In this document: one piece after another, positions 3,146 through 64,000 of the stretch | How the letters are laid out: every line of letters starts with the position of its first letter | Position numbering within the stretch: the stretch's first letter is position 1 | From: Ramazzottius varieornatus | Taxonomy: Eukaryota; Animalia; Tardigrada | Reading direction: 5' to 3' | Assembly (NCBI GenBank): GCA_001949185.1 | Contig: BDGG01000009.1 | Span: 609,624-673,623, forward strand | DNA: 64,000 nucleotides | The notes under the pieces: generated by a model | The model's input: only the letters and a program-made list of their open reading frames with translations | What the model was told of the DNA's origin: nothing | Database searches by the model: none | Position numbers and translations under genes: made by a program

Positions 3146-5606
3146 CGAGGGGATTTTCCCAATCTGCCGCCTCTGATCCTCAAACCGACATCACAGGTGG
3201 ATAGAGAAGAGTTCATCTTTCCGTTCCTGGAATAAACTGCAGGAACCGGAAGTTACGTCAAAATTAGGGCGGTACTGTACATTGACCGAGGCACAATCAA
3301 TAAGTTTGATTGACTCATAGTTGATTGGCCAAAATTGATTGTTCCTTCCATCATATGAGCTTGTCGCTGTCGCATGACGCATCTTTTGTTAATTCACTCC
3401 TCCCTAATCTTCCCACAACACTGCGATGTACTCCATCAATCCCTTGAACGTGCTAAAGCTCCTGGAAGAGGAATACAAACTCCGGTATCAGCCGGACGAT
3501 GCGCCAAGTGAAGCGGACAAGCAGCTGAAAGACCTTATCAAAGGTAGGTATTTTTCCGAAGGTTCAGTGCAGAAGTAAGAGGTTTTGTTTCATCGGATTG
3601 TTGGAATATTCTAGATCTTATTGACATCAAAATTGCTCGAAGCGACAGTCCTGTGCTGGAGGTTGAAGAGGACTTGCAGGGGGACCTACAGTTCGACGGG
3701 CTAACGTTCGACGACTTTGAAAAGACGGCGGGTGATGCTAGCCTGTTGAACGGTAGCGCTGAACGTTATTTCTTCGAAGATGATCGCTTGAACGAGCCTG
3801 TTACAAGTGACACTGAACCTTCGTCCCACGAAATATTTGTTCCGCGACTCCCAGATCCAAGAGTTCCGTCAAGCCAAGCTGTCAATCTCGACTACAAGAA
3901 ACGTGCTGTTGATTACTGGTGTAACGTTAATGCAAAGAAACGGCGGAGCTTGTCTTCAGTTCGAAACCATTCCACAAAAGTTTGGGACGAACTACAGCTA
4001 AGAGACTGGAAGAAACAGCTAGCTGAAGGCGGATCCCGATTCGACCAATTGAAAGTCATTCGCTTCGAGAGAGCAAAGCAGTACTACATGGCCAAGCAGA
4101 AGAGACAAGTAGTCAAGGATTTGGATCTTCAACGATGGGCGATAACCGCGAATAATGATGTGGATCTGCCTGGTTTCACCGCTTCGCCGTACGAGGTGTC
4201 AAAATTCAAACGGTAATTGATATCGTGCAAGAACTTACTTATCGATTTAACGAAGGCAAATCTTCTGTATTTGAACGTCGGAAAACGATTTCACCTGAAT
4301 CGTCAGTTCAAGTAGCGCACGTTACCGTACTCAATAAGTGACAGCGGCGCCACCAAAAACGACCTTTTCCTATTTGCTGGCAGTGTTCCGATGACATTTA
4401 TGCTATTTTGGCAGGTACTACGGAATATTTGATCGAAAGATAACGAAGTTCGTCACAAAGAAGTCCCTCGAAGCAGCTCCCCAAATCAAGCAAAGTGCAG
4501 AAGAGTGTGTTGCGCTGGTCAGATCCAGAATAGCGGAGCACGGATTGGACTGTCTTTGGAACACGGATCAATCGGGATTTGAATACGAGATGAGGCCCGG
4601 GAGAACTTTGGAGCAGAAAGGCGTGAAACATGTCGAGGCTATAACCCAGTCCAAAAATTCCATGACTCATTCCTATACTGTCATGATGACAATCTCTCCC
4701 GGCACACGAAAGTTTCATCCTATTTTGTTCATCACCCTGAAAGAAGAAAAAGGAGTCTTTGGCCCAATCGTGTCGAAAACGATGTTCAAAGCTGATAACC
4801 TGTACATCACTGCGTCGACATCGGGAAAAATGACGAAGAAGCTCTACGTGGAATGGTCCGAAAAAGTGTTGTTTCCGCATATGGAAGACCGCTGTATCCT
4901 TCTGGCTGACTCCTGGAAGACGTTCACCGATCAGGACGCTGTTATCGAACTCAAGCCCGAAGAGCTGCAGTACGAGATGATCCCAAAGTGGCTGGTAGTA
5001 TCCAGCCGTTGGATGTTCTTTGCTTCCGGATGTACAAGGGATGTTTCAAAAGGATCTGAAATTTCGTGTTTGTTAATGATATTCCTGTACATGTCCATCA
5101 TAGGGACGTACTCCTAAAACTTCATTCCTTACTGTATCAGCAGTTTCAGTCACCCAGATTCGAGAACCTAATTGTACGTGCCTGGTTCAAGTCGGGATAT
5201 ACGGATGAACGGGTACAGTATGTGAACCCCGCAAGCTTCATGCTCAAGAAGCTGAATGGCCGCTGTATCATAATAACTGTAAGAATACTGTCCTTCTGGT
5301 CTGTGGGTGGTGCAAAGGTCGCCTCTGTTCTCACCATTTCTATGATGTTCATCATTTCTGTACCATCTACCTGCCTTAATGCCTTTTTGAATTTTCCACT
5401 AGATATCTTTACGAGGACGGAAGTAACAGGTTAACTTGTAGCGCCACCTGTGTTTGGAACTTTGACGTAACTTCCGGTTCCTGCAGTTTATTCCAGGAAC
5501 GGAAAGATGACCAGGTTTCCGGTTCAGACTACAGAGAAAACTCTTCTCTATCCACCTGTGATGTCGGTTTGAGGATCAGAAGTGGCGGATTGGAAAAATC
5601 CCCTCG
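3146..5606 (+). mobile_element. Tc1/mariner-superfamily (pogo-like) DNA transposon, ~2.46 kb, with ~117-bp TIRs
   Basis: Left TIR 3146-3262 (CGAGGGGATTTT...GGAAGTTACGTCAAA) is the near-perfect reverse complement of 5461-5606 apart from a 29-nt insertion at 5510-5538. Flanks are GA/TG, possibly a degenerate TA TSD. Encloses a transposase. Confidence 0.9.
3426..5379 (+). pseudogene. Intron-containing DDE transposase with C-terminal Cys/His finger, frameshifted
   Basis: Exons ~3426-3544, 3615-4212, 4414-5379. Motifs NTDQSGF, LLADSW, IQPLD; C-terminal C..CGWCKGRLCSHHFYDVHHFC. Frameshifts near 4985 and 5265 plus an in-frame TGA near 5057. Confidence 0.8.
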
Positions 5607-6130
5607 TGAAAAGACTGATTTGATAAATAATTCAATGAATAATTAGATTTTGGAATTACAAAATGGCCCACAGCCCACCCCTGCATCAGGGTGAACGAAA
5701 AGTCGTCAGGGTTCGGTTCAATCAACCAGGGCACCGTTCCTGTTTGTTTGTAAACCGAAACCCTGATCATGATTTCGCCCCTGATCGTCCGGGGAGTGCC
5801 CGCAATCGGTCTGTCAAGTGTTCTAGGACCGGTTTCATCCCGCAGATGATGGATTATTTTCGCCCTGAGGGTCGGGGTGCAGAGGCGCACCAATTTGCCT
5901 GCAAGGGGCCCCGAGGTCTAGAAAGGTCGTGACGATGTGACTTTGACCTCTTGAAAAAATAAACATTTGCATTTGTTTGTTTTGCCAAATTTGCTTTTTC
6001 TTCTTCACGAATCACGGTTCTGTTCGTTAGTTCCTCACAATCCTCACCCAAACTGCAACATCAGCCCTTTCCAGGCGAACGCATCCGGTTCCCTTCCAGG
6101 TCTGCACCACCGTTCTCCGAGCTGACAAGG

Positions 6131-7327
6131 ATGGAGATTGGTGATCCACCGGAAAGTCCGGATCCGGAGGCTTTTGCTGTGGCAGACCAGATCGACCAGA
6201 TGCTGGATGGACCCGAGGATGCTGCTCACGCTGCGGACGAGATCGTGATGGACGACTACCACACCGTCGATGTCGAGACGACAGAAAGTCTTCAATCTGC
6301 TGCTGCGCAGCCTGTAGTTGATCACGTGCTTGCCGAGCCTTCCACTACTTTCGGTTCAGCTTCGAACCTTATGGCAAGTCCCTTCCTAAACCTGGGAGAG
6401 TTGTCGCCAGGAGTTACGGCAGCTTTGAAGCGCATGATGGAGGAGAAGGAGCAGAAGGAAAAGAGGGATACCGTGGTGTCGCAGATACGTGCACTTATGG
6501 ACTGGGACACGTTAACAGAGTAAAGTAATATTGTCACTGTTTAGACCAAGCTTTCGTTATGGAGTGGCGCACATTTTCATTGTTACTAACTGACGGTGTG
6601 CGCCACTTGGGAAAACAATCTGGATGAATTTGTTTCGTTTGCCGACGTCCCAGACCGTATTTGTTTTTTTTTCGTTGTCATCTTTGCAGAGACATCAAAA
6701 CCCTCTTCCCTGATAAATTTTTGTCCACTTTGGTGGAATGGATCTTGACAAAGTTCCAGCCGGACGTCGTTCGAGATGGCATACTGGATCAAAACAGGTA
6801 CGCAACCGGAAACGTTTTTTGAATCAAAGTACAGTATAGTGTACAAGCGCATAACGATATCGCTGATTAAATACCTTACAGGAAGGAGCAGGAGCTCTAC
6901 CGGAAACGAGAAGTCTTGGTGCAAGAGCATCAGAAGGAGCTGCAGAATATCAGAAAGCGGCATGCAGAAGTCTTGTCCGACTGTAATACAAGGAACACTC
7001 CACACAAGAAACCGGTAATAGCACGGACGAACGAGGAGGAAATGAATAAGGTATTAAAAGCCACCCAAAAAGTTTGCCATTCACAGATGGCGGTGAGGAC
7101 GGTGTTTCTTACAGTTGCTGGCTAAGCAGAAGGAGGAGCTGTTTTCCCTGGATTCCAAGATCGTCCTAGCTATTGACAACTTGCTGACGACCCAGCAGCG
7201 GAAGTTTCAAGATACGGGAATGCCTGGTATGGTCGAGACTCAGGACCCAGCTGAGATCTTGCGCCAGATCATCGTGATAGACGTGCTTGCGAGAATGGCC
7301 GGAGTCGACATTCGGATGGCAACTTAA
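6131..7327 (+). CDS. DGCR6: DGCR6/gonadal-family protein (4 exons: ~6131-6519, 6689-6797, 6882-7050, 7115-7327)
   Basis: C-terminal DSKIVLAIDNLLTTQQRKFQDTGMPGMVETQDPAEILRQIIVIDVL matches the DGCR6 pattern (D.KIVLELD..V..QQ.TL..AG..GF..T.NP.E...Q..LL..I). Coiled-coil middle; GT-AG introns. Confidence 0.75.
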
Positions 7328-8175: not shown

Positions 8176-10051
8176 ATGACCTCCGCATCCTGGCTCCTCT
8201 TTGTGAGTCTGTGCATAGCTGCCGTGACGGGCAAGGTGCACTTCAAGGAGGAATTCAGCGACACCAAGTGGGAGGATCGGTGGGTACAGTCGGAGCACAA
8301 AGGCAAAGAGTTTGGCACGTTCAAGCTGACACCCGGCAAGTTCTACGGCGATGCTGACATCAACCAAGGTCTGCAAACATCGCAAGATGCCAGGTTCTAT
8401 GGCATCTCTACCAAATTCGACTCCTTCAGCAACGAGGACAAGCCTCTAGTCATCCAGTTTTCGGTCAAGCACGAGCAAAATATCGATTGCGGCGGCGGAT
8501 ACGTTAAAGTCTTTCCTTCCGACCTCGACCAAAAGGATTTACACGGTACGCTTTCCACACAACTTCCTCCGAGTTTTTCTGGCAGATTGTCTTGTTCACT
8601 TCCGGTCAATCTGGCGAGAAAACAGGACATGAATTTACAGCTAACGTCAAACCTAGGACTGACCGGTCAGAATTTTCCCACTGGAATCTAAGCTGGGTGG
8701 TAATCGCTGATCTGCTGATTCGGCTTGGCTTCGCTTGATTAAGAGGTTTTTGATTTTGCCCTAGACTGTTGCTGGAATTGCTGTATACGTGTCGCGATTT
8801 CTTATCGAGTAATTTCCTTTGCAGGTGATTCACCTTACCTGCTGATGTTTGGTCCCGACATTTGCGGTCCCGGAACCAAGAAGGTCCACGTTATCGTCAA
8901 CTACAAGGGAACTAACCACCTTATAAAGAAGAACATCAGGTGTAAGGATGACGAGTACACTCACGTCTACACGCTCATCCTCAACACCGACGGCACCTAC
9001 GTCGTCAAGATTGACAACAAGGAAGAAGAGAAGGGTACTTTGGAGGATGACTGGGACATGCTGCCCGCCAAGATGATCCCTGACCCTGAAGCCAAGAAGC
9101 CCGATGATTGGGACGAGCGAGAGATGGTGAGTGAATGATATCGGAACATTTGCTCCAGAATACCTTTTAACGGTTTGTTCGTCACAGATTCCCGACGAGA
9201 CCGATACCAAGCCTGAAGACTGGGACAAGCCTCAGCACATCCCCGACCCTGATGCTACCAAGCCCGAAGATTGGGATGAGGAAATGGACGGCTCGTGGGA
9301 ACCACCTCAGATTGAAAACCCCGACTACAAGGTACGAACTTAGTTCCGTCTTTTTTCTGTTCCTGTGGCTTATCCTCTCTTCGTACTATAGGGAGAATGG
9401 AAGGCGAAGGAGATCAGCAACCCGGCATACAAAGGTAATTTTTTGCTTTGTTTTCACGCAGCTCGATAGACAAACAGACGAGATTGTTTCCCCAAGCGGC
9501 GCACTGCTCAGTGTTGTTGGGCAAGAGGCATGCGCCACTTGGACAAGATGGTTTTCCACAAGTCGCGCAACGCTTCTGTTCAATAAACTGGAAGCATGCG
9601 CCAGCTTCATGAAACCCATTTGATGCACACGAAACCCTGCGCTAACTGGGCTTTCTTCTGCATAGGCAAGTGGATCCATCCTGAAATTGAGAACCCCGCC
9701 AGGACGAGCTTGACCGCCGAGGATTTGAAGCTGGCAAAATTCAAGGATATCGGTGCTATTGGTATCGATATCTGGCAAGTCAAGTCGGGCTCCATCTTTG
9801 ATAACATCCTGATCGGTGACGACGCTGATGAGGCTGCCAAGCACGCCGAAGATACCTGGGGAGCAACCAAAGATGCCGAGAAGAAGATGAAGGAGACTGC
9901 CGATGAGGAAGATAGGAAGAAGGCTGACGAAGAATCCAAGAAAGAATCGGATAGCTCGAAGAACGATGACGATGATGAGACCGATAAGGCCGACAAAGAC
10001 TCTGATGATAAGGATGATCACGACCACGATCATGATCACGACGAGCTCTAA
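8176..10051 (+). CDS. CALR: Calreticulin (5 exons: ~8176-8545, 8825-9126, 9189-9331, 9392-9434, 9666-10051)
   Basis: Signal peptide, KHEQNIDCGGGYVKVF, MFGPDICGPGTKKVHVI, P-domain repeats IPDPEAKKPDDWD, IDIWQVKSGSIFDN, acidic tail ending HDEL. Confidence 0.97.
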
Positions 10052-11127: not shown

Positions 11128-13088
11128 ATGGTCTTCAAAGAGAAGCGGGTCTTCGCCCTTATCTTTTTAGCATCCTCTGTCTTTTGCGAGGTTTTCTTTG
11201 AGGAAAACTTCAACGATCCATCATGGAGGAAACGATGGATTACGACTAGCCAAAGATATTACAATGGAAAGCCATTCGGAAATTTCAACTGGACGGCCTC
11301 GACTTATGATGCGAACGATAAAAGTATCATGACGACAGATGACAACAGGTGCGGTACCGAATTTACATTAGTCCGTGTGTAGGATCCAGGCAAAAAATTG
11401 GACAAGATCCTTCATCCCAAGCGGCTTACGCTTTCAACCAATAACACAGAAAGCGTGCGCCACTTGGGAAAGACGACAAGATCATCATTACAAGTGGCGC
11501 GCGGTCATAGCGCTGCTGCCTAACTGCCTGCGCAGCTAGGGAAAATAATCTTCTCGAGTTCGCTTGCCGAGTTCTCACGAGACAGTGGATAGGCTGATGC
11601 ACTCGTACGTATTTTGTACCGTAGCCACTATGCCATTTCGACAACGATTCGAAAGTTCAGTAACCGTGGGAAGAGCTTGGTCATCCAGTTCACCGTAAAG
11701 TTTCAGACGAGAAACACAGCGGACTACGATGCAAAATACTGCGCAGCCGCCTTTTTGAAGCTTTTCTCACCGGACCATGATCCGAAGAAGCTGAACGGGG
11801 ACTCGCCGTACTTGATCAGATTTGGACCGGATACTTGCCCCACCGCGAACCGAATCCAGGCTGATATATTCTACAAAAACAAAATGTGGATTCACGCCCC
11901 CCGAGACTACGATAAAAAGATTTACGTCTGTAAGTATCGTCGTTCGCTTGGAAAGCCACAATGCGCCATATTTCTACGTATGTTATACAGCAGTATCAAT
12001 CTTTATGTGCTTGCAGATACGCCCATGCCATTCATTCCGGATGATTCGCATACACATCTGTACCAGCTGGTTTTCCATCCAAACTTAACGTACGAAAAGC
12101 GCGTCGATGGAAAGCTTATCGTCGAAGAAAGCGGGCATATGGAACATGGTAGGTAAGGGCCACGCTTGACTGCGGATCCGGAAGTGAGCTAATGGTTATT
12201 CACATTGGAAATCGGCGTTTATGGTAGGATGGCAGACACATCCGCCAAGACGTCTTCGAAAAGATCAGCCCAAACCAAGTGAAAACGAGTGGGACGAGCG
12301 CGAGTATATTCTGGACCCAGAAGACAAGAAGCCGGCGGACTGGGATGCGCACCAGTACGTTCCTGACCCCTATGCCAAGAGACCAGACGACTGGAAGGAC
12401 GATGTCGACGGCGAGTGGGAGCATCCTATCATCCGGAATCCTAAATACAAGGAGGAGTGGAAGCCTCGAGCGATTAAGAACCCGAAATATAAAGGACTCT
12501 GGCAAGCGGAAGAGTACGACAACCCTGGTAAGCTCCTCATTCCATTTCATACGTTACTCGTCGATCTAACGTGTGGGATGGTTTTGCAGACTACAAGGAA
12601 GACCCTGATTTGTATGTGATACCCGAAGTGGGAGCAGTCGGTTTTGAGAACTGGCAAGAAACTTCGGGTGAGGTGTCCCATTTGGCCCGTCGTCATGTGA
12701 CTTGAACATGATGGTACCCAAGTGGCGCACACTTGCGACCAATTCCACCGCAAATGTGCGCCACTCCAGATAACGATCGCGATCAATTGGTCTGCCAGCG
12801 TTTCAGTTTCTTTTCCTCGAAACGCTTTTGGTTTTGACGAGAATTTGGTCTATGTGATTAGGAGTGGTGTACGACAACGTTATGATCACCGACGACCTGG
12901 AATACGCTACAAGTGTTGCCCTGCCCATCCAAAAGAAGGCGTATGAGGCGGAGTATAAGGTCTTTGCCGAAAAGTGCGAGCAAGAGCGAATAAGGAAAGT
13001 TGCAGAACGCAAAAAGATTGAGAAAGACCATAAAAGACTGAACACAATCGCAGCTGCGTCAAACCCAAGCAGACACGACGAACTCTAA
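11128..13088 (+). CDS. Divergent calreticulin-like paralog (6 exons: ~11128-11348, 11624-11928, 12017-12148, 12228-12526, 12590-12667, 12862-13088)
   Basis: Signal peptide, VFFEENF, KSLVIQFTVK, CAAAFLKLF, PYLIRFGPDTC, DDSHTHLYQL, ILDPEDKKPADWD, GEWEHPIIRNPKYK, YDNVMITDD, C-terminal HDEL. Confidence 0.9.
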
Positions 13089-14477
13089 AGTCAGCTACAG
13101 AGAAACTTCCCGGATTCTTATCCGAGAAAGACCTACCTCTGTATTGTGGTGATGTTTACTGATCTTCACGGTTCTCGCGACGAAATACCGCACTGTACCA
13201 TATATTGCAAGTTATCATCAAAAGGCTGTCTGTTGACTTGGTAGTACACTGTATATGCCGTCTTTCGGACTTTGGACTATGAATCGCTCGATAATCAATT
13301 CTGATGATCCCTACAGATGGCTCTGGAAACATTCATGGAACATTTCATGGAACAACATTTCATGTGTACTCCATAAAAGCATACTTAGTACACCGCCACC
13401 AGCTGCGGAGCAGCATGGCGGCACACTGGTGCGAGCGCTTTTCTTGAGATATTGATGGGCCCAGCCACGTAACTTAGTTATCTCTAGCCGGTCAAAAACA
13501 TCAAGTTGACCTTCAAAACATTAGCACACAAGTACGCCACAACGGCGGTTTATAGCTGACAAACGCACTGATGCATCTTGATCGGGGAAGGATAGATGAG
13601 CAACCATACTAGTGCAGTGTATAGATGAGTGCCTGGCGCGGCGAATAATTCGACAAATTATCCCGAAATGAGTTATTCTTGCTACCGAGCCTTGCTACCG
13701 ATCCCACCGAAAAGAAAGAGGTGCCGGGGGATTTCAAGTTCTAAGCTCAAAGAGGCAATTAAATTTATTTTCCCATGCGGGTACGCCTCCATCGTAACAC
13801 GAAAGAACACAGAAATCACTGCTCCAGAAAAATGAAGAAATAAAGAAACAAGAACAGAGATCTGCCTGTAAGAAAACGAATGAATCTCTCTTGGAAAGTT
13901 TATCACAGTAGAAAGGACGGTAAAGGACAGGCAGCGCAGTCTGTTCGTTCCATAAACTATCTGCAGTCGGACGGAAAGTGCTATTTTGAGGGACGGTTTA
14001 TCGAAGAGCTCTGCGTAATCCGCCCATGTTCATCTAGGCACGAGATTCGGATGACGCGGTGACGCCATCGTCAAGGCTGATAATCCTACATTAAAGCAAC
14101 ATGATTAGCTCTCTATCACTGCCGTAAAGGTTCTTTGTGATCAACATTAGATGGGACGTCGGTAAATAATTTCATACTGATCGATATCGCACGTGGTGCA
14201 CTCTTGCACTGTAACTCGCTGAGTGCGTGCGCCACTTGATCTAACGATTTTGTCCAGTTTGTTGGCGCACGTTTCCATTGCAATTGGCTCGGAGCGTGCG
14301 TCAATTGCGAAAACGACCCGGCTGAAATCATTACCGACGTCCTAGATAATCTGCTCTTTGAATGTTGATGGCTTGATGCAACGACAAGCAGAGCGAGACA
14401 TGAAGGGAAGAAATGCTTACCCAGCACGCACGAGGAGCCATAAGATTCCCTTATGGCTGACTGCGGGACTCTAAAAC

Positions 14478-16495
14478 TCATTTGTACTCTTTGACAGTAA
14501 CACTGACAGTCCTTCCGGCATGGAAGACATCTCTGCCGGTGCTAATGACGGCAGCAGGCGGATTGTTATCCAGCCGCTTGAGTAGATTGACTTGATTATC
14601 GGGTAGTAACTGCAGTGTGTTGCTTGATGACGAGGAACGTCGCATCGCCGAGGCCTGTGCCATGCCGTTCAAGTTGAAGCTGGAAGCTGATGGGTGATAT
14701 CCTACGGCAAAAACAAATAGACCCCAATGTCAACACAACCCACGCTTTTGATGCAAGTCAACTTGACACTCAGCCAGCCAACTAAGGCAAATAAGCCTAA
14801 ACTACTTTCCGCTAAACTTCAGACTCGACACCGAAAGAAATTCTCCGAATCCGAAGGCCCACCACTAGATTATACTTGTTTATTTCGATACCACGCCCTA
14901 ATTTTTGTCAGAAAAGTTATCCTCACGTTACATATTTCGGAGTTTGTTATGATGGCAAAAACTTGGCACTTTGGGAGCTCGCCAGGCAAATTCGACCAGA
15001 TCGTATTTCCCAGTTGGCGCACTTCTCCAGTTTTCATTGGCTGGATGAGCGCGCCACTTTGGAAAAAAGTGTTGTTAAGTCCTACCAAGTGGCGTACGTT
15101 TCGGTACTGATGGCTACACGAGTGCGCCACCTGTGGAAATTATCCGGTCGAGTTTGTTTGTCGACTTCCTGATGTCGGATTTTGAATTTTGACGTCTCAC
15201 AGGCTTACCGCCGATTACGGGAGGTCTGGCGCTCTGTTGCAGCAGATGCTGACAAACATTGGGTTTCCGAAGTTTGAGAAGTTGACGGACGACCATCGTG
15301 ACGGGGACCAAGTTGAGCAGGAAGAGAAAGATGCCCATGGTCATGGAGACCACAGCCGGACTGTTTTCTGGGGCTTTCGTGACGGCCACAACAGCTGCTC
15401 CGTGTCCTGATGGATTAAAGTACTCATACCGCTCTTTTCACTTGAAGAGAAGGCTAATATTGACAGAATACATACCGACGGAAGCGATCGCCAGACAAGC
15501 TGCCAGCACGGAAAGGGCCAGATACGCCTCCAACATTGGCAGTAAGGAGCGAACATCGTGTTCGCTGATCTCCATCGGATTGGGCGGCTGGATGCAAATA
15601 CACCCCAGACTGATGCCCACCATCCCCGTAAACTACAAAAAGATATATATGAAACAACTGATCATCAAAAGGTACAATATCATAATAAGAATAACGGTAA
15701 AAAAATGAGCCGGATAATGCCGGAACAACCCAAATCAGGGAAACGCCCACAAGTTCAAAATTCATGCACTGGTGCGTGATATAATCTGCACTTTCCACAA
15801 TGTGCTGGGAGGCGAGTGTGACAAGAATAAAGTCGTTAAGGATGCGTGTTAGGAGATATTCCTTCCGGTATGTTAAATTGTCGTGTACGTACTATTGTCA
15901 GTCCGATGGTCACGTAGCAGGTTTCCAGATTTCCTACAGCGAATGAAAAAAGATGCATTCATTTATGCGCTTCCTTCACAGCTGCAAATAAACACCAGCT
16001 AATGAAAATCAGATAATGGACTGATGGTAGGTATTTTTCGTTTGGCCGAGCTCCATTAGCATGCTGAGCTAGAGTTAATGTGGAAGAAAATCGATCTGGA
16101 GGCCCGCAAACGAAGCGCGCAAGACTGTCGTCTCAAGTGGCGCACTTTTTCATTCTTACTGGCTAGCGCCGCTTTGAGCTACAATCTTGTGCGTTCTGTT
16201 TGCCGGCCTCTCAGTTGGACTAACCCACAAGGATGCTTGGGAAAAGGAGGATGATGCCTATCAGCATCTCGATCAAGCCTATTACGACAGGTCCCCGACG
16301 AAGGCCGTAGTACAGAGACGAAGCTTGATAGCGGTTGTTGGCTGGTCCATTCGGTGGTGTTTCCAGGTTGTGGATGGCCATCTTGACGCTGTCCGTGTCA
16401 CTGTGAGGAGGGTCCCATGAACGGACGGAATGCCGGGAGTCTTTCCTGTAAGGGATAGAAACACTATCTTTGAAATCATCCTGATCATGATCCAT
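14478..16495 (-). CDS. Multi-exon membrane protein with ~4 hydrophobic segments (MS4A/CD20-like topology); exon structure approximate
   Basis: MDHDQDD... N-terminus followed by VVIGLIEMLIGIILLFPSILV, LVGVSLIWVVPA, AYLALSVLAACLAIASVG and MTMGIFLFLLNLVPVTMVV, then a Ser-rich tail ending TVKEYK*. Minus-strand splice signals present. Confidence 0.55.
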
Positions 16496-38457: not shown

Positions 38458-38914
38458 ATGCGTGGACTACTTTTCTGTATCCTGGTTCTCGCGATCCTGG
38501 CCATCGTCCTTGGTAAGTCACATCCTCCCCTCTCTTTTTTTGCGCGACCTGCTAACCTGATCGTTGGTTCGTTATGTCAAGCGGCGCACGTTTCCAGCCA
38601 ACAACACTGTAAACATGCACCGCTTCGGCGAACCAGCCTGACAGGATAGTTTTCCCAAATTGGCGTTCTTTTACATACGGTACGAGTGGCTGGAAGTGCG
38701 CGCCACTTGGAAAAGCGATCTGGTTCAATTCGCCTGTGCAACTTGTCTCTTACCGTCGTTGTAACCTTTCGTCTTCTTTGCAGAGCATGCCGAGGCTCAG
38801 ATATTCGGCGGTGGCGGATCCGGGGATGGTGGAATGATCATTTTCCTCAAAAACGACAAGGCCAGTGCATCATCGAACCTTCTCAAGCAGCTCCAGCTTC
38901 AGCGGCAGAAATAG
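38458..38914 (+). CDS. Small secreted peptide precursor, paralog A (exons 38458-38512, 38784-38914)
   Basis: MRGLLFCILVLAILAIVL|EHAEAQIFGGGGSGDGGMIIFLKNDKASASSNLLKQLQLQRQK*; TATAAAA at ~38333. Confidence 0.8.
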
Positions 38915-46561: not shown

Positions 46562-47296
46562 AAACCAACTTCCTCCACCAAAAGTAAACAATTGGGACCA
46601 GGCAAACTAACTCGATAACATCGTTCTTCTTAGCGACGCACGCTTCCAACCGCTGACAATGGAAAAGTGCACCACTTGGTCAAGCCAGCTCGACAAGATC
46701 GTTTCGTCAAGCGGCGCACTTTTCCAGTTAATAACACCGTAAAGCTGCGCCGCTGGGAAAAACAGGGTTGCCCAATCCATTTGCCGAGCTTTCAGAAACG
46801 TACATGGCTCGTAAGATCTGTTAAAAATTCGAAGATTTTGACAGACTGTTTTTGTAGCTCAAAGAACCGCTTCTGCATCTTTCAAGGGCAACATTCAAAC
46901 GCCGTCTGGTTGATGCGTTTCGTTCACTACTAGTATCTGTCCGCACCGACTCCGGTATACTTTTGAATGATCGACGCTGCACCGCAGGTAGAAAGCAATA
47001 TGACAACAGCACTAAATTAATTGCTTTAGATCAGACACTATTATGCACGAGACCCATTGTTATGCGGAGATCATTTGATCTTGTGGTCGAAATTACTTCG
47101 AATGTGCGGGCGAGAGCTTGGGTAACAGCTCTGTTGTTACAGCACTCTTCGACATAACTCCCATCAGACATGAACGATTCACTGCTGAAAGGCACAAGTT
47201 TTAAGAAGTCGCCATTTCAGTTTCAGTTCAAAACACAAAAGTCAATAGGTGTAGTTTGTTTTTGCGGATTAATATTTCAACCACGCGCCCATCACA

Positions 47297-53124: not shown

Positions 53125-56100
53125 CTAGTCCACACTGGCAGCGTCGTCATCGCCCAGTCTTTTGCGGATGCGGCATTTGACGCACAGCGACCAGAGGAAC
53201 TGCGCCAGGCAGCGCCGGAAGCGGCGGCTCATCAAACAGTAAATGGGGAACCTCCAGCAACACCCACTGATGCCCGTCCACAAGCAGGCAAAATGCAGAT
53301 AGGGAATGTCGCCAACTTTTCTTTGGCTTATTCTCTCGTATGCCAAGAGCGCGAACCAGGGCAACCAGCCGAGAGCAAACGTCACGATAATCGCAAATGA
53401 CATTCGATGGGTGGGATTGTACAAGTTCTCCGTCGTGGAAGTCAGCGCTTCTTTCTCCTATCATCCAAATCAAGGTTTGTTAGCCAATTGTACACCTTTG
53501 CTAGTCTAACGGGAAGATAAACATGATCACGCATCAAACCCCGCCTAATATCGATATTCGATCAACGGATTTCCGAAGTGTCAAAACTAACACACTGCAT
53601 CAGTCAGGTCGAAAAAGTCCCCATGTGATAAAGCCTATTCCAATCACACTCTACTTCCTGTGGATCCACTAAATTTTTTCAGAACTCTTTCACCCGCTCT
53701 CATATCAAACTAATCCGACATCCTATGTTCTCGGATTTGAATTGCAAAATTGACTTAAAATTGAAATCCAACTTGGAAGGTCGGCAAAAAAACGTACTCG
53801 TACAGTATGATCGACTCAAGTGGCGCACGTTCTCATTGTTGCTGGCTGAGAGCGTGTGCCACTCAAGACGGCGATGACTGCTTTCTCATGTTGCGCATGT
53901 TGTAAGTTTGTTAACTGGAAGCGTGCGCCACTTGCGATAACGACCTTGTACGTTTCGTTTCCCGGGTCATATAAACCCCGTCCCAGCCACCTTGCTACCA
54001 CCTGGCATTTCGGCCACAAAAATTCAGATTCTGAAAAATTTCGTGCATGAATTTTCATTCTGAAAATTAATCTAAACAAACGTACAAGTATCTTAGCAGT
54101 CGGGAAACATTGAGAAAGACCAGAAAAGATTTTAAGTAGCTTGGCAAACGAATTAAAACCGTGAAAAGTCATTTCAGTCAAAATTTCTAGCTCTTTTTGG
54201 GAACGACAGATTCACATTTCCAGCCATTTTTTCTGTAACTTGGTTCGTGTCCTGATTATTTTCGGCAACAGTACCTCAGAACTTCAACGGAGAACTGAAA
54301 AATCAATTTTCGAAAACGGCTCCGAAAACTGCGAAAACTGGTATGTTTTCTCCTTCGCTCCTTTCCTGACCCTATCTCGGTTTCTACTTTCCGTGAGTTG
54401 ATTTCTGGCCAGTATTTTGTGGGAAGGAAGCGAAATTAATGTTGAAACAGGGAAAATTCGTTTCGGAGTTGAGAGATGATCGCGTCGAGAAAGCCATGAT
54501 TCTAAGAGTGGTAGCAAGTTGGCTGGGAGAGGCTGTATTATCTGTTCACATTCTGCTAAAATTCGGATCTCCGAAATCTGGGGTCGACTGTACAGTAAGG
54601 ATAAGTTCGATCACAGAGACCAACCACAAGTGGGACGGATACTTGGGTTTCCAAACAGCGCAAAGTACCTGACGTACTTGGTCTTTGATATCTCGTTTCA
54701 GTTCGGCCATCTCCTTCAGCACGTGGTAATAGCAATAGCACATGGTGGTGATGGTGGGCCCCAGAATGAGGGTGAGCAAAGTAATGGAATACGCCAAGGT
54801 GGAGGACAAGTTGAGCACGCAAAGGTCGACGCTGGCAATGAACCTGCAAAGCCGTGCACCAAAATGGTCAATAAATCGCAAAACAGGATAATTAGCGAGA
54901 CCACTAAATAGTGGGGACCAAAGCTGACGAAAGTGTGAAATGGCCTCTTACGTGACTTGGTTTGTGGCAAATAACGTTGGCGAACAGAGGACTATCGATG
55001 TGACCCATGTGAACACAACCTGGAAGAATAGGGCGGCTATATCAGCAAGCTTGGTTCGGAATATGGATTGACATCCCCAACAATGGAAGGCCGTCAATTC
55101 AAGGAGACAAATACCCAACACTGGCAACGGATCCGTGTCTGAATGGCTTCATAACGCGTTGGCTTCCGGATGGCTAAATATCTAGCGCGAAAGAGAGAAA
55201 AAACGTGCAGGTTATTTGGACAGAATATTCTCCCATTCCCTTCATTGGCCGTGAAGTATCGAGTTCTACGAACCCTCAACGAGCCTTGTTTGCATATAAA
55301 GAGCGAGTAAATTGACTGTCTACTGTCTGGCCGTTCGTGATATGGCCTTTTTGTGTGCATGTTTAGTCTGTCGGGTGTTGTACAAGCAGCAAAAGGACAA
55401 CATGGGGGACCTGGACAAAAAGCAATCACAAAGACCCTGCAACGGCCTGACATACCTGTCGACCGATATCCATCCCAGCGTATAAATAGCCACGGCCCAT
55501 AACGTCACCTCCACGTACGCTGAAAATACAAATCTCAATTTTATAAAAGAATTTACTAGGTGGTTCCTCATGAAATATTGAGTTAATTTTCATGGAACCA
55601 AATGAACGTCAGCTAACGATTCCAGCCAGATCGTCATCTCAAATGGCGCGCATTATAGGTGTTATTGGCTGAAAGCCTGCGTCACTTGAAAGAGCTGGGC
55701 AAGATCGTTTTCTCAAGTGGCGCATTTTTGCACTGTAATTGGCTGAGAGAGTGCGCCATATGGAAACCGATCGAAGTGAATTTGTTTGCCGACGGTCCGA
55801 AAACGAAAAAAACCCAGTTTTTCTCACCTGTTAATTTGCATACTGCTGGTCCGTACCTAAAATTACGAAAGAATTATAGTGGTAAGGAATTTCGATTAAT
55901 GTGCTGGATGAATTGAGCAAATGGTTGCTTACGGCCATTCTCCGTAAAGGGCAGGAAAGATGGATAGCGGTGTCAGGAATACCCCAGTGGCCAGATCAGC
56001 TCCAGCGAGCGATAGGATAAAATATCCAATCATGGAGTGTGAATGTACAGAGGCCGACATGGAACAAATAATCAAAACGTTAAAGAGAATAATGAAAAGT

Positions 56101-57565: not shown

Positions 57566-57758
57566 GGGACATTGGCAAATGAGTGTTTATAAAGTGGCGC
57601 AAACTTTCAGCCAGTAACACTGGCAACGTGCGTCACTTGCAAAGATACTCAAACTGGACAAGATCGGTTTTCCAAGTGGCGCACACTCATGAATAATAAC
57701 AATGAAAAAGTGCGCCACTTCAGATAACGACATCGGTGAAATCATTTGCCGACGTCCC
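57566..57758. repeat. Doublet palindromic element upstream of the GPCR CDS
   Basis: One pair of outer arms enclosing two cores (57593-57637, 57675-57719), each with a 25-nt spacer. Confidence 0.9.
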
Positions 57759-60041
57759 AAATGACAACTACGATAGGGATATTGAACGCCTCGTTTTTCC
57801 AGCTTTCGAAATAAAACTAAATTCTAATATTTTTCTCTTTTCATGTTTTGCCAGAGTGTGGTCTGTCCCATTGGCCAGAAACATTTCCTGTATTTTCACG
57901 CCCAAATGAGCGTGGGAAGTTACAGTGCACCACGCAACGAACGACCAAGAAGATTCATACGATCCTGCGGATTCCGTCCACGCATTGCTGTAATTCTGCG
58001 ACATTATTATCCGCCTTCGCTAAGCCCCTAGTGCCCGTGGGACGAAAGACTATGCGAAAAGTACCAATAGGTCAGCCGTAAAAGCTCGCCCCGAGCGCGC
58101 CCACGTAATCGACTTCCATAGCGTATTTTTATGTGCCATGCAAACGACTTCCTTTGGTTCCTTGCACATCCAGCTACTGTACATTCAGTTTCCGGACAAG
58201 TCCCCCTCGTTAATATTATACGGGAGAGAAAATTTTCAGATCGTTACGAAAGTGTTTCTCGAGAACAAGCTGATCATCATTAAATTTGCGGTTTGCGCAT
58301 ACTGCGACGGATACAGCACAGAATGTGATCGATTGACGCGTCACTTTCGAAACAATTTCCCTACAAATAAGGCTCCTGCAAGTTTCGACCGTTTCAGTTT
58401 TTAATGATACCCTGCAAACATTCCACCAGTAGCTTCTATCGTTCGTCATCAGCTTCCGGCAGTCAGTATGTATCCTGCTAGTGAATGGAGAAATACTCTT
58501 TCCATAAGTCCCTGAAGCCATGAAAAACAGATGGCTTTCACCCAGCAAACTCATTAAGCCGGATATTAGTCTGGGTCTTCCACAGCGATACCAGACATCG
58601 GAAACGACGCGCTTCATGTACTGAGCTTTCTGGAAAGACTGCAGTTAGTTCTCTTTCCAGATGATCGGCCATTTAGGAAGCGTGGCAAACAAGCACACCA
58701 ATACTGCTGTTGATGCCTCATAAATCAACGATCTCGTCCAGTGCTTGATTGTTTCCCCACGTAGCGCACGTTGTCGGCGCTGATGGCTGGAAGCGTGCGC
58801 CACATGAAAAAAAGAAATTGTGTAGTTTGTTGGCCCCGAGCTTTTTATGGTTCAACAAGACTTGCCGGACTATCTGGAGAAGAGGAATATGTGACATATG
58901 AACCAAAGTCAGACGAGCGGCTCTCCTGTTTTGTGGAAGACCAGAAACGAATTTTCCCGAGAGGTTGCAAGGAGCCGTGTTTCCGGCGCTCTTGTCAGTG
59001 CAGGTCATTAACTATGCAAAGATCTCGATAACTTGACATGCAGTCCAGATAATTTCCTTTGACAGTTTGCCATGGGCTCGCATACTTCTCCAAAGTCCGC
59101 TGTGGCCCAAAGTGCGGTTTACAGTGCGTCAGTGTACCACTTACAACCCCAAAAGAATCCAGCCAGCCCGGAATAATTCACTTATTAATCAATCTAATTC
59201 TCAAGCTGTCACGATCGATATGAGGGGAAACTGCAGTGACGTCAGGCTGAATTAGCAGGAAATTTCTGGGATGAGGGTATTAGGCAGATCGCCTCGCCGG
59301 CATCTGCCATCAGTCATCAGGGCCAACGCAAAAATGAGTACCTTCAGCCATAACATTTTCAGTCAGCGGCAACATGCTCCGAAACCTCAACCCAATCACG
59401 AGGCCTTCTCAAAATTCAGAGCCGAGAACCCGAGATGGCGTTTTTTCCATTGAAAAGCTTGCTGTGACGCATAATTACTGTTTGATCAATTGTGCCCATT
59501 ATCATTTTATATTTCAATAATTTTTCCTCGAGTCTCGCAAAAGGAGATGGAATCCTTCCCACCAGAATTCATATGCTAACAAAATTCGAGTTGAGTTTTT
59601 CCGGTTGAAGAGAATGGGCCATTGAACTCTGGTCATGTGGCGCAGACACCTCGCCGTTGTCGCCGTAAAGAGCTCCCGGCAAAATCAGCTCTTTGCCATT
59701 GAGCCAGCTGCCGAGTCTTCGCCGTCATCTTTGGGGCTAAGGCGAAGGCCGCTACACTGACATCACACACTACTAAAGGTCGGAGACATAAAGTCTACAC
59801 AAAAACAAACACAGAAGCCTGTGAAAAAAATCAAAGACATTTTTTATGCTGCATTCTTCTGCGCTTCAATTAGGACAGCGGTGCGTTGCGTACACAACCA
59901 GAGTTCTTCGCTGTGGTTCGGATCTTCAGAGACGGTGAGAGAAGCAAACGCCGTACATGACGTAAACAAGCTACGACATGGCGTATGCATATGTTGACAT
60001 TGATTCTTTCGGTACGGACAAGTTTCCGCATCATCGAATAA

Positions 60042-60933
60042 ATGGACAAGCTAAATGTCTCATTACTTCGGTCGCTGATGATTCTTCTTCCTGTTGCTGC
60101 CATTTTTGCAAAAGGCGAAACTCTGAAGGGTAACAAATTTTCGCCCATGTTACCACTCGCTAAAAACCAGCTAGTCTCATCTACTGTATACCGGTATCAG
60201 CAGGTTAAAATCCCATTTCATCTTCATTCTAGTTTCACGATGCTCCGGCGAAGGCATGGATGTAACGCTGACCGGACCCTTTCAAGGACTCCTCACGGGT
60301 ACGTAGACGCCTCCCCACCAACTCAAATGTATGCTCAGTGCACAGTTTTGAAGATGCTCAACCAAGCGCCTGTTTTTAGTGAAGGGAACATCCTGTCAGG
60401 TCGAAGTCCGATTGATGGATTCATCCCCCATCATGTTCTTCGTGCCGTACGGTGAAAAATGCGCCATCAAAGTGGACTACCTCGTACGTTTCGAAATATT
60501 TGAAAGTACGGCAAACCAACTCCGCCAGATTGTTTTATCAAGTGGCGTACCCTCTCAGTTTCATAAGCTGGGAGAGTGCGCCACTTGGTAAAAGCGACTG
60601 TGTCGCATTTCTTCCCCGATCTCTCGTCTGTGTGCCTACACGCTTATACACAATTGTGAGATAACTATTATGAAGATGATCCTTCTGCAGGGTCGAGCAT
60701 TGTTCACCTTGCTAATCTCGGAACAAAAGACTGGCGACCTGGGCCACAAAATCTATTATGACGTCAAGGAGCGGACCATGCTTTGTCAGTATTACGTCAA
60801 CGCGGCACTCAACATAGCTTCCGATCCTCGATTAGGAACCGGAAAACTATCCAATGAGATCGTGGCGCTCGAAAGAAGCTTCTACCCAGTCTTCCCTGGA
60901 GTCTTTCAGTCAAACATTCTACAGATAGAATAA
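60042..60933 (+). CDS. Small secreted protein with a stand-alone ZP-N-like domain (5 exons)
   Basis: Signal peptide, then spliced SRCSGEGMDVTLTGPFQGLLTVKGTSC...FFVPYGEKCAIK...YYDVKERTMLCQY. The four-Cys spacing and the C...M.V...F.G...VKG..C and final C.Y pattern are those of ZP-N. Confidence 0.6.
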
Positions 60934-61689: not shown

Positions 61690-64000
61690 ATGGCGCGGTC
61701 CGTCGACAGGATATGGATGCACAGAAAGTGGAGCCTACTTGTTGTCCTACTATCCCTGTCCAAATCTCACGGCCAATTTAACCAGTTCCCCCAGAATATT
61801 GATAACTCTGGAGCTAACCCCTTCAACAAACCTTTCAGTGATCCCTTCAGCAACTTCCAAGCCCCAGGTAACCAGCACAGCAAGCTAGACATCAAATTAA
61901 TCAGGGATTCCAGCGAATAATTTCACCCAGATTAATTCACGCATGCTCTCGGCCAATTACAGTGTAAGCGTGCTCCACTTGGGATAACGATTTGGGAAAC
62001 TATTTTACCGACGTTTCCTTTCCCGTTTCAGCAACACTTCTTATTCGTAAATGTTCGAGAGCGGAAACGTAAAAAGTATCTACGAATCTGATTTTGCAAT
62101 GACTTAAAGTTATTAAACTGGCATCAGGCAAACTCATCACAACTCGTTCTATTTCGTGTAGCACTTTTCTGCGAGCTTTTTTCCTACGATTTATCGTGAT
62201 GATATCACTCAATTTTGATCCTGAGAAAGCTTTCATACATTCTCCTCTACGTTGCCTAAATTTTCCATTTTCTGTTCTTGAAGAACCAAAGCTGAATCTG
62301 AACGACCAAAGACCGGACTATGTACCGCATGAGTCTCCTTCGCAGTATCGCGACAGCGCGTTTGAAGACCGTCAACTTCCGGGTTCAGCAGATGGCTTCA
62401 GTTTGCCGGGCAATCAATTTACCGGTCAAGCTGAACCTGCGCAACAGTTCGGCATGCCTGAAATGCGCCAGCTGCCGCTGCCCCAGCTGCCCAGTCCCGG
62501 TGTTCAGCAGTTCCCCAACGTCCAGCTGCCCAACTTCCAAGAGCCTCAGTTCCAAATCCCCCAACAAAACTTTGGCGGTCTCCCTGACACCATGAACAGT
62601 GGTGGTTTCGGTAACGGTGGTTTCGGTAACGGTGGTTTCGGTAGCGGTGGCTTCGGTAACGGTGGCTTCAATGCCGGACCAGGCTGGCCCACCAACAACC
62701 CTCAAGGCGGACAAGCCATGGGACCAGTGGGCGCTGGACAGTTCGAAGTACCCGGCATGCAAGGCCAGAACCCCATGCAGCAAATCAATCAAGGCAGTCA
62801 GATGGACTTTAGTGGTCAACCCATCAACCAACAGTTTCAACAGAACCAATTTCAGCCACAGGCCAATACCGATGATCGACCACGCTTCCAAGCAGGTCGA
62901 CCTCAGCAACGAAACAACCAGTTCGGACAACCGGCCGAACAGCAACAGTTGCAAGAACAACAGCAAGAGTTTAAGGGTGAACAAAACTCATTCAATGGGG
63001 AAATTTCCACCGCGGCGGACAATAATCCAGCCATGGTTGGCTCCGTCAAGGTTGTGCCGATGGAAGTTGGGCCACTAAGCTCGCGACGCAATCGTAACCG
63101 CAACAAGCAACCCGACAACGAGAACCCGGAACAAGGTAACGAAGAGATCGCCACGCCTTCATCGATACCTGAAGGCCTGAAAGAAATCTCCAGCCATGGC
63201 GGTATGCCCGATTGCGGCTTCCACGGACTAGAGACCTGGCAGAAGAGTCCTTGTGAAACCTGCTCGTGCCGCAAGGGTATCACCACCTGTAAGAAACTGG
63301 AGTGCGAAGAGAAACCTGACGATTCGTCATGCATCCCTGTCTACAAACTCAGCAACTGCTGTCCGACTTTCCAGTGCTGTAAGTATCAAAGCTTCATTCG
63401 ACAACCATTGGCTATAAAACACTAAAATAATTTCCAAGTAGCATTGTTAACCTGGAAAAATTACGGAGAAAGTGCGTTACGGATCAATTTCGTCACGGTG
63501 TTTGGACATGCAGATGAAAACCATAGAAAAAAACACTCGTTTCTTATTTTTACTTCCCACTTGAATATTCAAGGTTTAATGGATTGGTTCAATTATATTT
63601 TACTGTGTTTTTATAGCGAACAATACTTCTCGCGGTGAGCTGCCCACGGTGGACGCCCAGCCTTTGAAAGGTATGAACCTTCACTTCGAATTCAACTGGG
63701 AGGTCAGCAGACCGAACGCACAAGATCGTCGTCGTCTAAGTGGCGTACGTCAACGTTGTTACTGGCTGAGCCATGCGCCACTTGGAAGAGAAACGGTCTT
63801 GTCGAGTTATTTTCCCCAGTGGCGCACGTTGCCGCTATTACTGGCTGAAAGTGTACGCCACTTAAACATAACCTCGAACGTTTCGTTTGCCGACCTCCCT
63901 TTTCGAAGCATGACAGTAAAAAGCGAGATCATTAAAAAATTAGCCATCCTATTCTCGTTTGTAGAAGGTGATCCTTGCACCGAGGTTGGAAAATTCCTAC
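61690..64000 (+). CDS. Secreted Gln/Gly/Phe-rich protein with a VWC (von Willebrand factor C) domain; runs off the window
   Basis: Signal peptide WSLLVVLLSLSKSHG; exon ~62284-63378 with GGFGN repeats and ETWQKSPCETCSCRKGITTCKKLEC...C......CCPTFQC. Confidence 0.75.
63698..63899. repeat. Doublet palindromic element, GGGAGGTC arm type, VWC gene intron
   Basis: GGGAGGTCAGCAGACCGAACG...two cores (63739-63782, 63818-63862)...CGTTTCGTTTGCCGACCTCCC. Confidence 0.9.

What the first reader, a model, noticed from the sequence alone, without database searches (positions are those of the whole stretch)
4311..63862. Pervasive palindromic element with a fixed-geometry core, AGTGGCGCAC-N25-GTGCGCCACT
Seen: about 38 loci (51 core units) of a ~120-bp inverted-repeat element. 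The left arm is approximately GGGACGTCGGCAAACRAAYTCGACCAGATCGTTTTCCCA-AGTGGCGCAC, followed by a spacer (consensus about GTTTTCATTGTTATTGGCTGAGAGC, in either orientation) and the reverse-complement arm. By manual count the spacer is exactly 25 nt in ~40 of 51 units and 24-26 nt in ~49. The 10-bp cores stay recognisable while outer arms and spacer sequence carry many substitutions, and the arms also carry indels. Established: MITEs are short palindromic non-autonomous elements that normally decay roughly uniformly. Inference: selective retention of two inverted half-sites at fixed distance looks like a binding site for a dimeric DNA-binding protein, i.e. a domesticated MITE forming a genome-wide cis-element system (chromatin, cohesin/insulator, centromeric or replication role unknown). 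Caveat: copies were found by their cores, which biases toward core conservation.
Basis: partly seen in the sequence, partly recalled or inferred. Interest (0 to 1): 0.92.

Follow-up and report, generated by a model that had tools for sequence, protein, structure and literature searches.

The report
Old intronic MITE with protected boxes
The repeated palindrome is a very old, very abundant 123-bp miniature DNA transposon sitting mostly in short introns of what is probably the tardigrade Ramazzottius varieornatus. It is ordinary except that its two inverted 10-11-bp boxes have decayed about three times more slowly than the rest, which suggests thousands of kept protein-binding sites.

Summary
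The window holds 54 units in 39 loci of a ~123-bp near-perfect palindrome. AGTGGCGCAC-N25-GTGCGCCACT occurs 7 times perfectly in the window (0 in shuffles) and 916 times in the 55.8-Mb genome.

It is an old Sola1-like MITE: flanks read AWWT, there are no young copies, and it has roughly 14,000 units. RNA contigs show copies filling four short introns.

The "spacer" is the inner 8-bp stem plus 9-nt loop of the original hairpin. Its sequence decays like the arms.

When copies are chosen by one half only, the partner box AAGTGGCGCA is intact in 28%. An arm 10-mer is intact in 3% and the terminal 9-mer in 5%. Per-site survival is 0.88, 0.70 and 0.72.

- Arm subfamilies explain little of this difference.
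- The box CpG survives in 93% of halves, against 25-51% for arm CpGs.
- No compensatory changes support a hairpin function.

Spacer length is only about twofold better kept than an equal arm segment (83% against 64% exact). The two boxes decay independently, so a dimer reading both half-sites is not supported.

The binding protein is unknown. The box matches the Drosophila CTCF consensus AGGTGGCGC at 8 of 9 positions, which is only a lead. Cross-species and binding tests could not be run.

This scan has already reported the same family from at least eight other windows of this genome.

The parts
4277..4380 (.). MITE unit (1)
   Evidence: nhmmer profile hit; first box at 4311
6558..6647 (.). 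MITE unit (1), perfect box pair 6563-6607
9463..9603 (.). MITE double unit (2)
11392..11572 (.). MITE double unit (2)
12689..12799 (.). MITE unit, perfect box pair 12721-12765
14158..14339 (.). MITE double unit (2)
14978..15166 (.). MITE double unit (2)
16105..16208 (.). MITE unit
18643..18737 (.). MITE unit
21072..21180 (.). MITE unit
21715..21890 (.). MITE double unit (2)
23095..23169 (.). MITE unit (outer arms eroded), perfect box pair 23098-23142; lies in intron 23026-23255 of a minus-strand gene
24340..24523 (.). MITE double unit; lies in intron 24247-24598
25959..26067 (.). best-preserved MITE unit of the window; lies in intron 25846-26119
   Evidence: hairpin z -8.1
26732..26893 (.). 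MITE double unit, decayed
27816..27997 (.). MITE double unit; lies in intron 27765-28026
29586..29696 (.). MITE unit
31614..31723 (.). MITE unit
32156..32261 (.). MITE unit
35664..35777 (.). MITE unit with both termini (GGGACGTCGGC...GCCGACATCCC)
36627..36670 (.). MITE half-unit (fragment)
36991..37057 (.). MITE half-unit (fragment)
37518..37713 (.). MITE double unit, perfect box pair 37552-37596
38567..38736 (.). MITE double unit
41043..41154 (.). MITE unit (24-nt spacer)
41809..41910 (.). MITE unit
44810..44921 (.). MITE unit
46000..46108 (.). MITE unit
46601..46790 (.). MITE double unit
47461..47575 (.). MITE unit with both termini
50742..50835 (.). MITE unit
51402..51500 (.). MITE unit
53780..53965 (.). 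MITE double unit
55608..55793 (.). MITE double unit
57586..57755 (.). MITE double unit, perfect box pair 57675-57719
58727..58835 (.). MITE unit
60509..60621 (.). MITE unit
61911..62013 (.). MITE unit, one box lost
63703..63896 (.). MITE double unit; last box ends at 63862

Best explanation
**Shown**
- The element is a very old, non-coding, ~123-bp palindromic DNA transposon (MITE) with Sola1-like ends and an AWWT target consensus.
- It spread to roughly 14,000 units in a 55.8-Mb genome, probably the tardigrade Ramazzottius varieornatus. In the one stretch with RNA evidence its copies sit in short introns.
- Copies then decayed to about 30% divergence.
- The 25-nt 'spacer' is the inner 8-bp stem and 9-nt loop of the original hairpin.
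- One 10-11-bp box in each half, AAGYGGCGCA(C), has accumulated substitutions about three times more slowly than the arms, termini and spacer.

**Inferred**
- The boxes are kept by purifying selection as recognition sites on double-stranded DNA for a sequence-specific host protein, such as a zinc-finger architectural factor of the CTCF kind or a transposase-derived binder.
- Each box probably works largely on its own, with at most a mild preference for the inherited spacing.
- On this reading the MITE seeded thousands of binding sites, roughly one unit per gene, and many are still maintained.
For: **MITE nature**
- Palindromic consensus with no coding capacity; 54 units in the window.
- A-W-W-T consensus immediately outside GGGA...TCCC on both sides. 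AWWT is the Sola1 hallmark (PMC3845634).
- 916 perfect pairs and 7,002 perfect boxes genome-wide, against 0 and 20 for the reversed controls.
- The best genome hit to the best window copy is only 84% identical, so the family is old and no close sister copy of it turned up.
- RNA contigs put single or double units inside four introns of 230-352 nt. An element-free intron of the same gene is 69 nt.

**Protected boxes**
- Partner-half ascertainment in 264 kb: box identity 0.82-0.95 against arm 0.51-0.73.
- Genome-wide, among 264 halves chosen by the opposite half, the box 10-mer is intact in 75, the arm 10-mer in 8 and the terminal 9-mer in 14. Per-site survival is 0.88, 0.705 and 0.72.
- Agreement between the left and right halves of one element is 0.84 in boxes and 0.62 in arms.
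- Four or more arm subfamilies raise arm identity only from 0.71 to 0.77, against 0.91 for the box.
- The box CpG is kept in 93% of halves, against 25-51% for arm CpGs and 48% for the CpG directly beside the box.
- G>A and C>T rates in the box are 4-5 times lower than in the arms.
- The boundaries of the conserved block are sharp.
- The termini are not protected, which argues against a transposition requirement as the cause.

**Reading as DNA sequence rather than as structure**
- There is no excess of compensated double changes in boxes (8 against 6.4 expected) or in the inner stem (57 against 63.5).
- Hairpin potential is lost in decayed copies.
- Rfam gives no match.

**Lead on the reader protein**
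- The box reads AAGTGGCGC. The strong Drosophila CTCF consensus is AGGTGGCGC (PMC1904468).
Against: - There is no binding, footprint, polymorphism or cross-species evidence.
- Slower decay could also come from local low mutability, or from a long history of many small source lineages selected for mobility. A 350-kb sample cannot resolve the latter. The nearest-neighbour check was done for a single copy only.
- The CTCF resemblance fails at the near-invariant G of 'AG'. It also lacks the upstream CC module at the right distance, and the constrained block is only 10-11 bp.
- I could not test whether the genome encodes a CTCF orthologue.
Confidence: 0.55

Rival explanations
1. It is an ordinary old MITE with no host function. 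The boxes look conserved because they are subterminal transposase-binding sites kept along the lineages of mobile source copies, or because they are a local mutational cold spot.
For: - All arm subfamilies share the same box. This is what a site needed for mobility would look like.
- Arm pairwise identity is over-dispersed relative to column shuffles (variance 0.0161 against 0.0099), so some source-lineage structure exists.
- An insect Sola1 MITE also carries AAGTGG inside its TIR (table in PMC3845634).
- No functional data exist.
Against: - Subfamilies account for only about 6 points of arm divergence.
- The within-element left/right comparison still gives 0.84 against 0.62.
- The termini, which a transposase also needs, decay like the arms (0.72 per site).
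- Selection for mobility acts only through copying, so it should leave shared variants and close relatives. The best relative of a good copy is only 84% identical.
- The CpG inside the box is the best-kept dinucleotide, while the CpG touching the box decays like the arm CpGs. A regional cold spot would not give such sharp edges.
Confidence: 0.3
2. The two inverted boxes are half-sites read together by a dimeric protein, and selection holds them exactly 25 nt apart.
For: - The spacer keeps its exact length in 916 of 1,106 pairs (83%). A 24-nt arm segment between equally strict anchors keeps its length in 213 of 334 (64%).
- Meanwhile the spacer sequence decays like the arms (0.68 against 0.69).
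Against: - The spacing is inherited from the hairpin, and most whole elements also keep their full length.
- The advantage is only about twofold.
- The two box states are uncorrelated (rho 0.04; both perfect in 14 of 146 units against about 16 expected).
- Genome-wide, the partner box is intact in 28% of cases when the first box is intact. That is no higher than the 33-34% of boxes that are perfect in the local sample.
- A centre-to-centre distance of 35 bp is unusual for a simple dimer.
- Box-to-box distances across double units vary from 30 to 53 nt.
Confidence: 0.12
3. The palindrome acts as a structure: an RNA hairpin in the intron (to loop out the insertion, or as a small-RNA precursor) or a DNA cruciform. 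The GC-rich boxes would be kept as its clamp.
For: - In the one stretch with RNA evidence the copies are intronic and transcribed as pre-mRNA.
- Intact copies fold very stably (z -8.1), and box-box stems persist when both boxes are intact.
Against: - There is no excess of compensatory changes in boxes or inner stem.
- Within-element arm complementarity is barely above the between-element level (0.62 against 0.57) and sits at subfamily positions.
- Decayed copies fold no better than shuffles.
- Rfam gives no match.
- The RNA contigs show the elements spliced out, not accumulating.
Confidence: 0.05

Closest known systems
Sola1-derived MITEs (e.g. Sola1_NA of Bombyx mori and Rhodnius prolixus; PMC3845634)
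   Same: Short non-coding element with long inverted repeats starting GG(G)AC. Flanks and target consensus are AWWT, the stated hallmark of Sola1. Hundreds to thousands of dispersed copies.
   Different: - Here the whole element is one hairpin of 123 bp.
- The copy number is far higher (about 14,000 in 56 Mb).
- The family is much older (about 30% divergence).
- An internal box is kept while the termini decay.
- No autonomous Sola1 partner was sought.
Transposon-borne transcription-factor or CTCF sites (rodent B2 SINE CTCF sites, from my own knowledge; plant MITEs amplifying TF motifs, PMC5950925 as listed)
   Same: A mobile element carries a short motif, spreads it to thousands of places, and the motif outlives the rest of the element.
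   Different: The binder and its occupancy are unknown here. The carrier is a palindromic DNA transposon, so each unit gives two convergent sites. The host is a compact tardigrade genome, and the four copies placed by RNA evidence lie in introns.
CTCF-binding site of Drosophila (strong consensus AGGTGGCGC; PMC1904468)
   Same: The box AAGTGGCGC matches 8 of 9 positions, including GTGGCGC.
   Different: The second base is A, not the strongly preferred G. The upstream CC module is not in register. Only 10-11 bp are constrained, against about 18-20 bp. CTCF presence in this genome was not tested.
Bacterial REP/BIME palindromic units (my own knowledge)
   Same: Short, abundant, palindromic extragenic units that occur singly or in pairs and serve as protein-binding sites.
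   Different: The tardigrade element is eukaryotic, intronic where placed by RNA evidence, transposon-derived with AWWT flanks, and unrelated in sequence.

Membership tests
MITE (non-autonomous class II element) | Short, no coding capacity | tested here: met
   About 123 bp with no ORF; the profile is 116 positions plus termini.
MITE (non-autonomous class II element) | Terminal inverted repeats | tested here: met
   The whole element is a palindrome, GGGAsSTCGGCAAAC...GTTTGCCGAsSTCCC. The best copy folds with z -8.1.
MITE (non-autonomous class II element) | Target-site duplication | tested here: inconclusive
   Both flanks show an A-W-W-T consensus. Identical left and right 4-mers occur in only 2 of 33 elements (0.5 expected). 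The central WW is identical in 8 of 33 (2.7 expected). The duplications appear eroded by age.
MITE (non-autonomous class II element) | High copy number, dispersed | tested here: met
   7,002 perfect boxes and 916 perfect pairs spread over many contigs. 0.19-0.84 units per kb in the samples.
MITE (non-autonomous class II element) | Autonomous partner with the same ends | not tested
Sola1 superfamily | 4-bp AWWT target / TSD | tested here: inconclusive
   The flank consensus fits AWWT on both sides, which is the hallmark per PMC3845634. Exact duplications are mostly eroded.
Sola1 superfamily | Sola1-type DDE transposase with matching ends in the genome | not tested
   No Pfam model that I know of, and no further loci could be cut out.
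CTCF-binding site | Match to the core consensus (AG at 6-7, GGC at 10-12, strong AGGTGGCGC in flies) | tested here: inconclusive
   AAGTGGCGC matches AGGTGGCGC at 8 of 9 positions. The G of 'AG' is replaced by A (box).
CTCF-binding site | Upstream CC module in register and a constrained site of about 18-20 bp | tested here: not met
   With GGC set at positions 10-12, positions 1-2 read TT. The nearby CCC (arm positions 30-32) is displaced and poorly kept (0.62-0.77). The constrained block is 10-11 bp.
CTCF-binding site | CTCF orthologue encoded and bound in vivo | not testable with these tools
   zf-C2H2 hits exist, but their DNA could not be fetched. The papers read do not state whether tardigrades have CTCF.
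Exapted transposon-borne binding site | The motif evolves more slowly than the rest of the element under unbiased ascertainment | tested here: met
   Per-site survival is 0.88 against 0.70-0.72.
Exapted transposon-borne binding site | Conservation at orthologous sites, or SNP depletion | not testable with these tools
The metagenome scan found nothing. The RNA runs labelled as other organisms carry virtually the same sequence, with a single differing base.
Structured RNA / hairpin RNA gene | Compensatory base changes keeping the pairs | tested here: not met
   Compensated double changes: boxes 8 against 6.4 expected; inner stem 57 against 63.5. Rfam gives no match.

The most novel reading that the evidence does not exclude
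A palindromic MITE has seeded roughly 28,000 convergent-pair sites, about one unit per gene, for a host architectural DNA-binding protein (CTCF-like or transposase-derived). Selection still maintains a large share of them, giving this compact tardigrade genome a transposon-built, genome-wide cis-element system.
Probability: 0.3. Interest if true: 0.75.

Novelty: new member of a known kind. Interest (0 to 1): 0.5.

Why it matters
If the boxes are bound, this would be a clear invertebrate case of a DNA transposon wiring thousands of sites for one factor into a very compact genome. It would give a direct handle, an 11-bp probe, for finding that factor in an animal studied for extreme stress tolerance.

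Even without a function, the family matters for annotation. In the one gene checked it multiplies the length of short introns about 3- to 5-fold (69 nt against 230-352 nt). By my estimate it makes up about 3% of the genome.

The papers I could search do not describe the family or its protected box.

Tried and rejected
1. **Chance or low complexity.** Rejected by shuffles and reversed-pattern controls.
2. **Core conservation as an artefact of finding copies by their cores.** Rejected by partner-half ascertainment, both locally and genome-wide.
3. **Arm subfamilies as the cause of apparent arm divergence.** They exist: CTCGACa/c, TTCACCC and AACGtAC types. They explain only about 6 points of identity.
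4. **CAG/CTG to CGG/CCG co-changes in the spacer as hairpin covariation.** No excess over shuffled partners.
5. **Known RNA family.** None in Rfam.
6. **Double units as one fixed master form.** Box-to-box linker distances vary from 30 to 53 nt. Their origin is unexplained.
7. **Cross-species test.**
   - The metagenome scan for the 22-base pattern found nothing, which is uninformative.
   - The RNA runs labelled organisms B and C carry virtually the same sequence, with one differing base in one of them.
8. **CTCF orthologue and autonomous transposon.** Later listings withheld letters, so a TSD listing was not possible.
Not found in the papers and supplements I could search.

Full report
**What is there**

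The pattern AGTGGCGCAC-N(20-30)-GTGCGCCACT occurs 7 times exactly in the window, always with N=25, and never in 100 shuffles. With one mismatch per half there are 23 pairs, 20 at 25 nt and 3 at 24 nt.

An iterated nhmmer profile finds 54 units in 39 loci from 4277 to 63896.

The window is G000:C9:609624-673623 of a genome of 55,842,812 bases in 200 contigs. That size equals the published Ramazzottius varieornatus assembly of 55.83 Mb (PMC5531438; supplement of PMC7943196). The species is therefore my inference, not a direct test.

Genome-wide there are 916 perfect N25 pairs, against 0 for the reversed control. There are 7,002 perfect 11-mer boxes against 20 for the control. At the measured per-site survival this implies about 28,000 boxes, or roughly 14,000 units.

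**Anatomy**

The consensus is a single long hairpin:

(AWWT) GGGAsSTCGGCAAACGAACTCGACaAGATCGTTTTCCC - AAGTGGCGCAC - GyTTTCAG CCAATAACA CTGAAArC - GTGCGCCACTT - GGGAAAACGATC...GTTTGCCGAsSTCCC (AWWT)

Fifteen loci hold two units. The distance between their facing boxes varies from 30 to 53 nt, so there is no fixed second lattice.

The flanks show A-W-W-T on both sides. AWWT is the stated hallmark of Sola1 transposons (PMC3845634). Exact left/right duplications are mostly eroded: 2 of 33 against 0.5 expected, with the central WW identical in 8 of 33 against 2.7 expected.

The best genome match to the best window copy is 84% identical. The family is therefore old, with no young copies.

**Setting**

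I laid RNA-derived contigs of four runs on 22500-28400. They define minus-strand introns at 23026-23255, 24247-24598, 25846-26119 and 27765-28026. Each contains one or two units placed near its middle. An element-free intron of the same gene is 69 nt. The elements are spliced out.

Rfam finds nothing in the window.

**Is the core really better kept?**

1. **Partner halves in a local sample.** In 264 kb (the window plus 200 kb of contig 1), halves were found with a half-element profile and only the opposite half was scored. Box identity was 0.82-0.95 against arm identity 0.51-0.73.
2. **Genome-wide pattern counts.** 264 halves were chosen by TGCGCCACTTNNNAAAACGATCT.
   - The partner box AAGTGGCGCA is intact in 75 (28%).
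   - The partner arm 10-mer AGATCGTTTT is intact in 8 (3%).
   - The same-side terminal 9-mer is intact in 14 (5%).
   - Per-site survival is 0.88, 0.705 and 0.72. After Jukes-Cantor correction, box divergence is about one third of arm divergence.
3. **Left against right half of the same element.** This comparison does not depend on any consensus. The halves agree at 0.84 in boxes and 0.62 in arms.
4. **Subfamilies.**
   - Arm pairwise identities are over-dispersed (variance 0.0161 against 0.0099 after column shuffling).
   - At least four arm types exist, but assigning each half to its own type raises arm identity only from 0.71 to 0.77. The box stands at 0.91.

The oriented profile gives arms 0.69, boxes 0.89-0.90 and spacer 0.68, with sharp edges.

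The CpG inside the box survives in 93% of halves. Arm CpGs survive in 25-51%, and the CpG directly abutting the box in 48%. G>A and C>T rates are 4-5 times lower in the box.

The GC-rich box should decay faster under the spectrum seen in the arms, yet it decays more slowly. The termini, which a transposase needs, decay like the arms. For these two reasons I read the pattern as constraint acting after insertion, not as a by-product of mobility.

**Geometry**

The spacer has its exact length in 916 of 1,106 perfect pairs within ±2 nt (83%). A 24-nt arm stretch between TCGGCAAAC and the box keeps its length in 213 of 334 (64%). The difference is significant (z about 7) but only twofold. The local sample gives 84% against 72%.

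Most complete elements also keep their full length. "Fixed geometry" is therefore mainly inheritance plus a generally low indel rate, with a modest extra retention in the spacer.

The two boxes of a unit decay independently. The correlation is rho 0.04, and both are perfect in 14 of 146 units against about 16 expected. This gives no support to an obligate dimer. The test is weak, however, because age differences and ascertainment pull in opposite directions.

**Structure-based readings**

Compensated double changes are not enriched in boxes (8 against 6.4 expected) or in the inner stem (57 against 63.5). The excess in the arms (187 against 131) sits at subfamily positions.

Decayed copies fold no better than shuffles (z -0.7 to -1.6). 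The best copy folds at z -8.1.

Both strands' versions of the box are kept equally. This fits reading of double-stranded DNA better than reading by an RNA-binding protein.

**Who reads it?**

This is unknown. The box AAGTGGCGC matches the strong Drosophila CTCF consensus AGGTGGCGC at 8 of 9 positions (PMC1904468).

Three things count against CTCF. The mismatch falls on the strongly preferred G. The upstream CC module is not in register. Only 10-11 bp are constrained.

Whether tardigrades have CTCF is not stated in the papers I read. I could not test it, because no more genome sequence could be fetched.

A transposase-derived binder is an equally open possibility. An insect Sola1 MITE also has AAGTGG inside its inverted repeat, which may be coincidence.

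**Limits**

- The metagenome scan found nothing.
- The runs labelled as other organisms carry virtually the same sequence, with a single differing base in one of them.

**Relation to earlier work**

The same family has already been reported by this scan from at least eight other windows.

My results agree with the notes that found boxes kept 2-5 times better than the rest (s1-789700, s1-789775, s1-789778, s1-789703). They agree with the intron-lengthening note (s1-789753). They disagree with the note that copies evolve just like intron DNA (s1-789758). I could not verify the note that a published library lists the family (s1-789678).

**Verdict**

This is a real, very abundant, old Sola1-like MITE, lying in introns wherever RNA evidence let me place it. 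It is an ordinary kind of element with one non-trivial property: a protected 10-11-bp box present twice per unit. That property is best explained by retained protein-binding sites (confidence about 0.55).

Noticed in passing
window 47618-50713 (+): A 1,031-codon open frame encodes a mucin-like, threonine-rich protein with about 20 repeats ending in (D/E)YLPP(T/S). It gives only a weak Pfam YLP-motif hit below the cut-off. It accounts for the strong AT skew of this stretch.
   Followed up: partly
window 8176-8691 (+): Exon of a calreticulin/calnexin-family gene (Pfam PF00262, E 1e-14). MITE units lie downstream of it at 9463-15166; I did not check whether those units fall inside this gene.
   Followed up: partly
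window 32980-33570 and 62601-62669: Glycine-rich coding tandem repeats with 15-45-nt periods, for example GGTGGTTTCGGTAAC repeated 4.6 times inside the ORF at 62196-63425.
   Followed up: no
window 28103 joined to 23333 in RNA contigs: Contigs of all four RNA runs join 28103 to 23333 with 9 extra letters between. The same runs differ from the assembly at 28175-28196. Two neighbouring minus-strand genes probably share near-identical repetitive exons, or the contigs are assembly chimeras.
   Followed up: no
window 26039: RNA-run contigs of all four runs carry one extra A behind 26039, inside the spacer of the unit at 25959-26067. This is either a 1-nt assembly error (the spacer would then be 26 nt) or contigs from another copy.
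   Followed up: no
whole window compared with G000:C1:1000001-1200000: MITE density is 0.84 units per kb in the window against 0.19 per kb in the contig-1 sample. The reason for this local 4-fold enrichment is not known.
   Followed up: partly
G000:C1:1478-1652: Three perfect boxes on the same strand lie exactly 82 nt apart at the very start of contig 1. This suggests a tandem array of units near a contig end.
   Followed up: no
double units, e.g. window 24340-24523, 57586-57755, 63703-63896: Fifteen loci hold two units joined by a short linker made of partial arms. Loop orientation is the same in 10 of the 14 double units I compared. The linker length varies (facing boxes 30-53 nt apart), so the way these doubles arise is unexplained.
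   Followed up: partly
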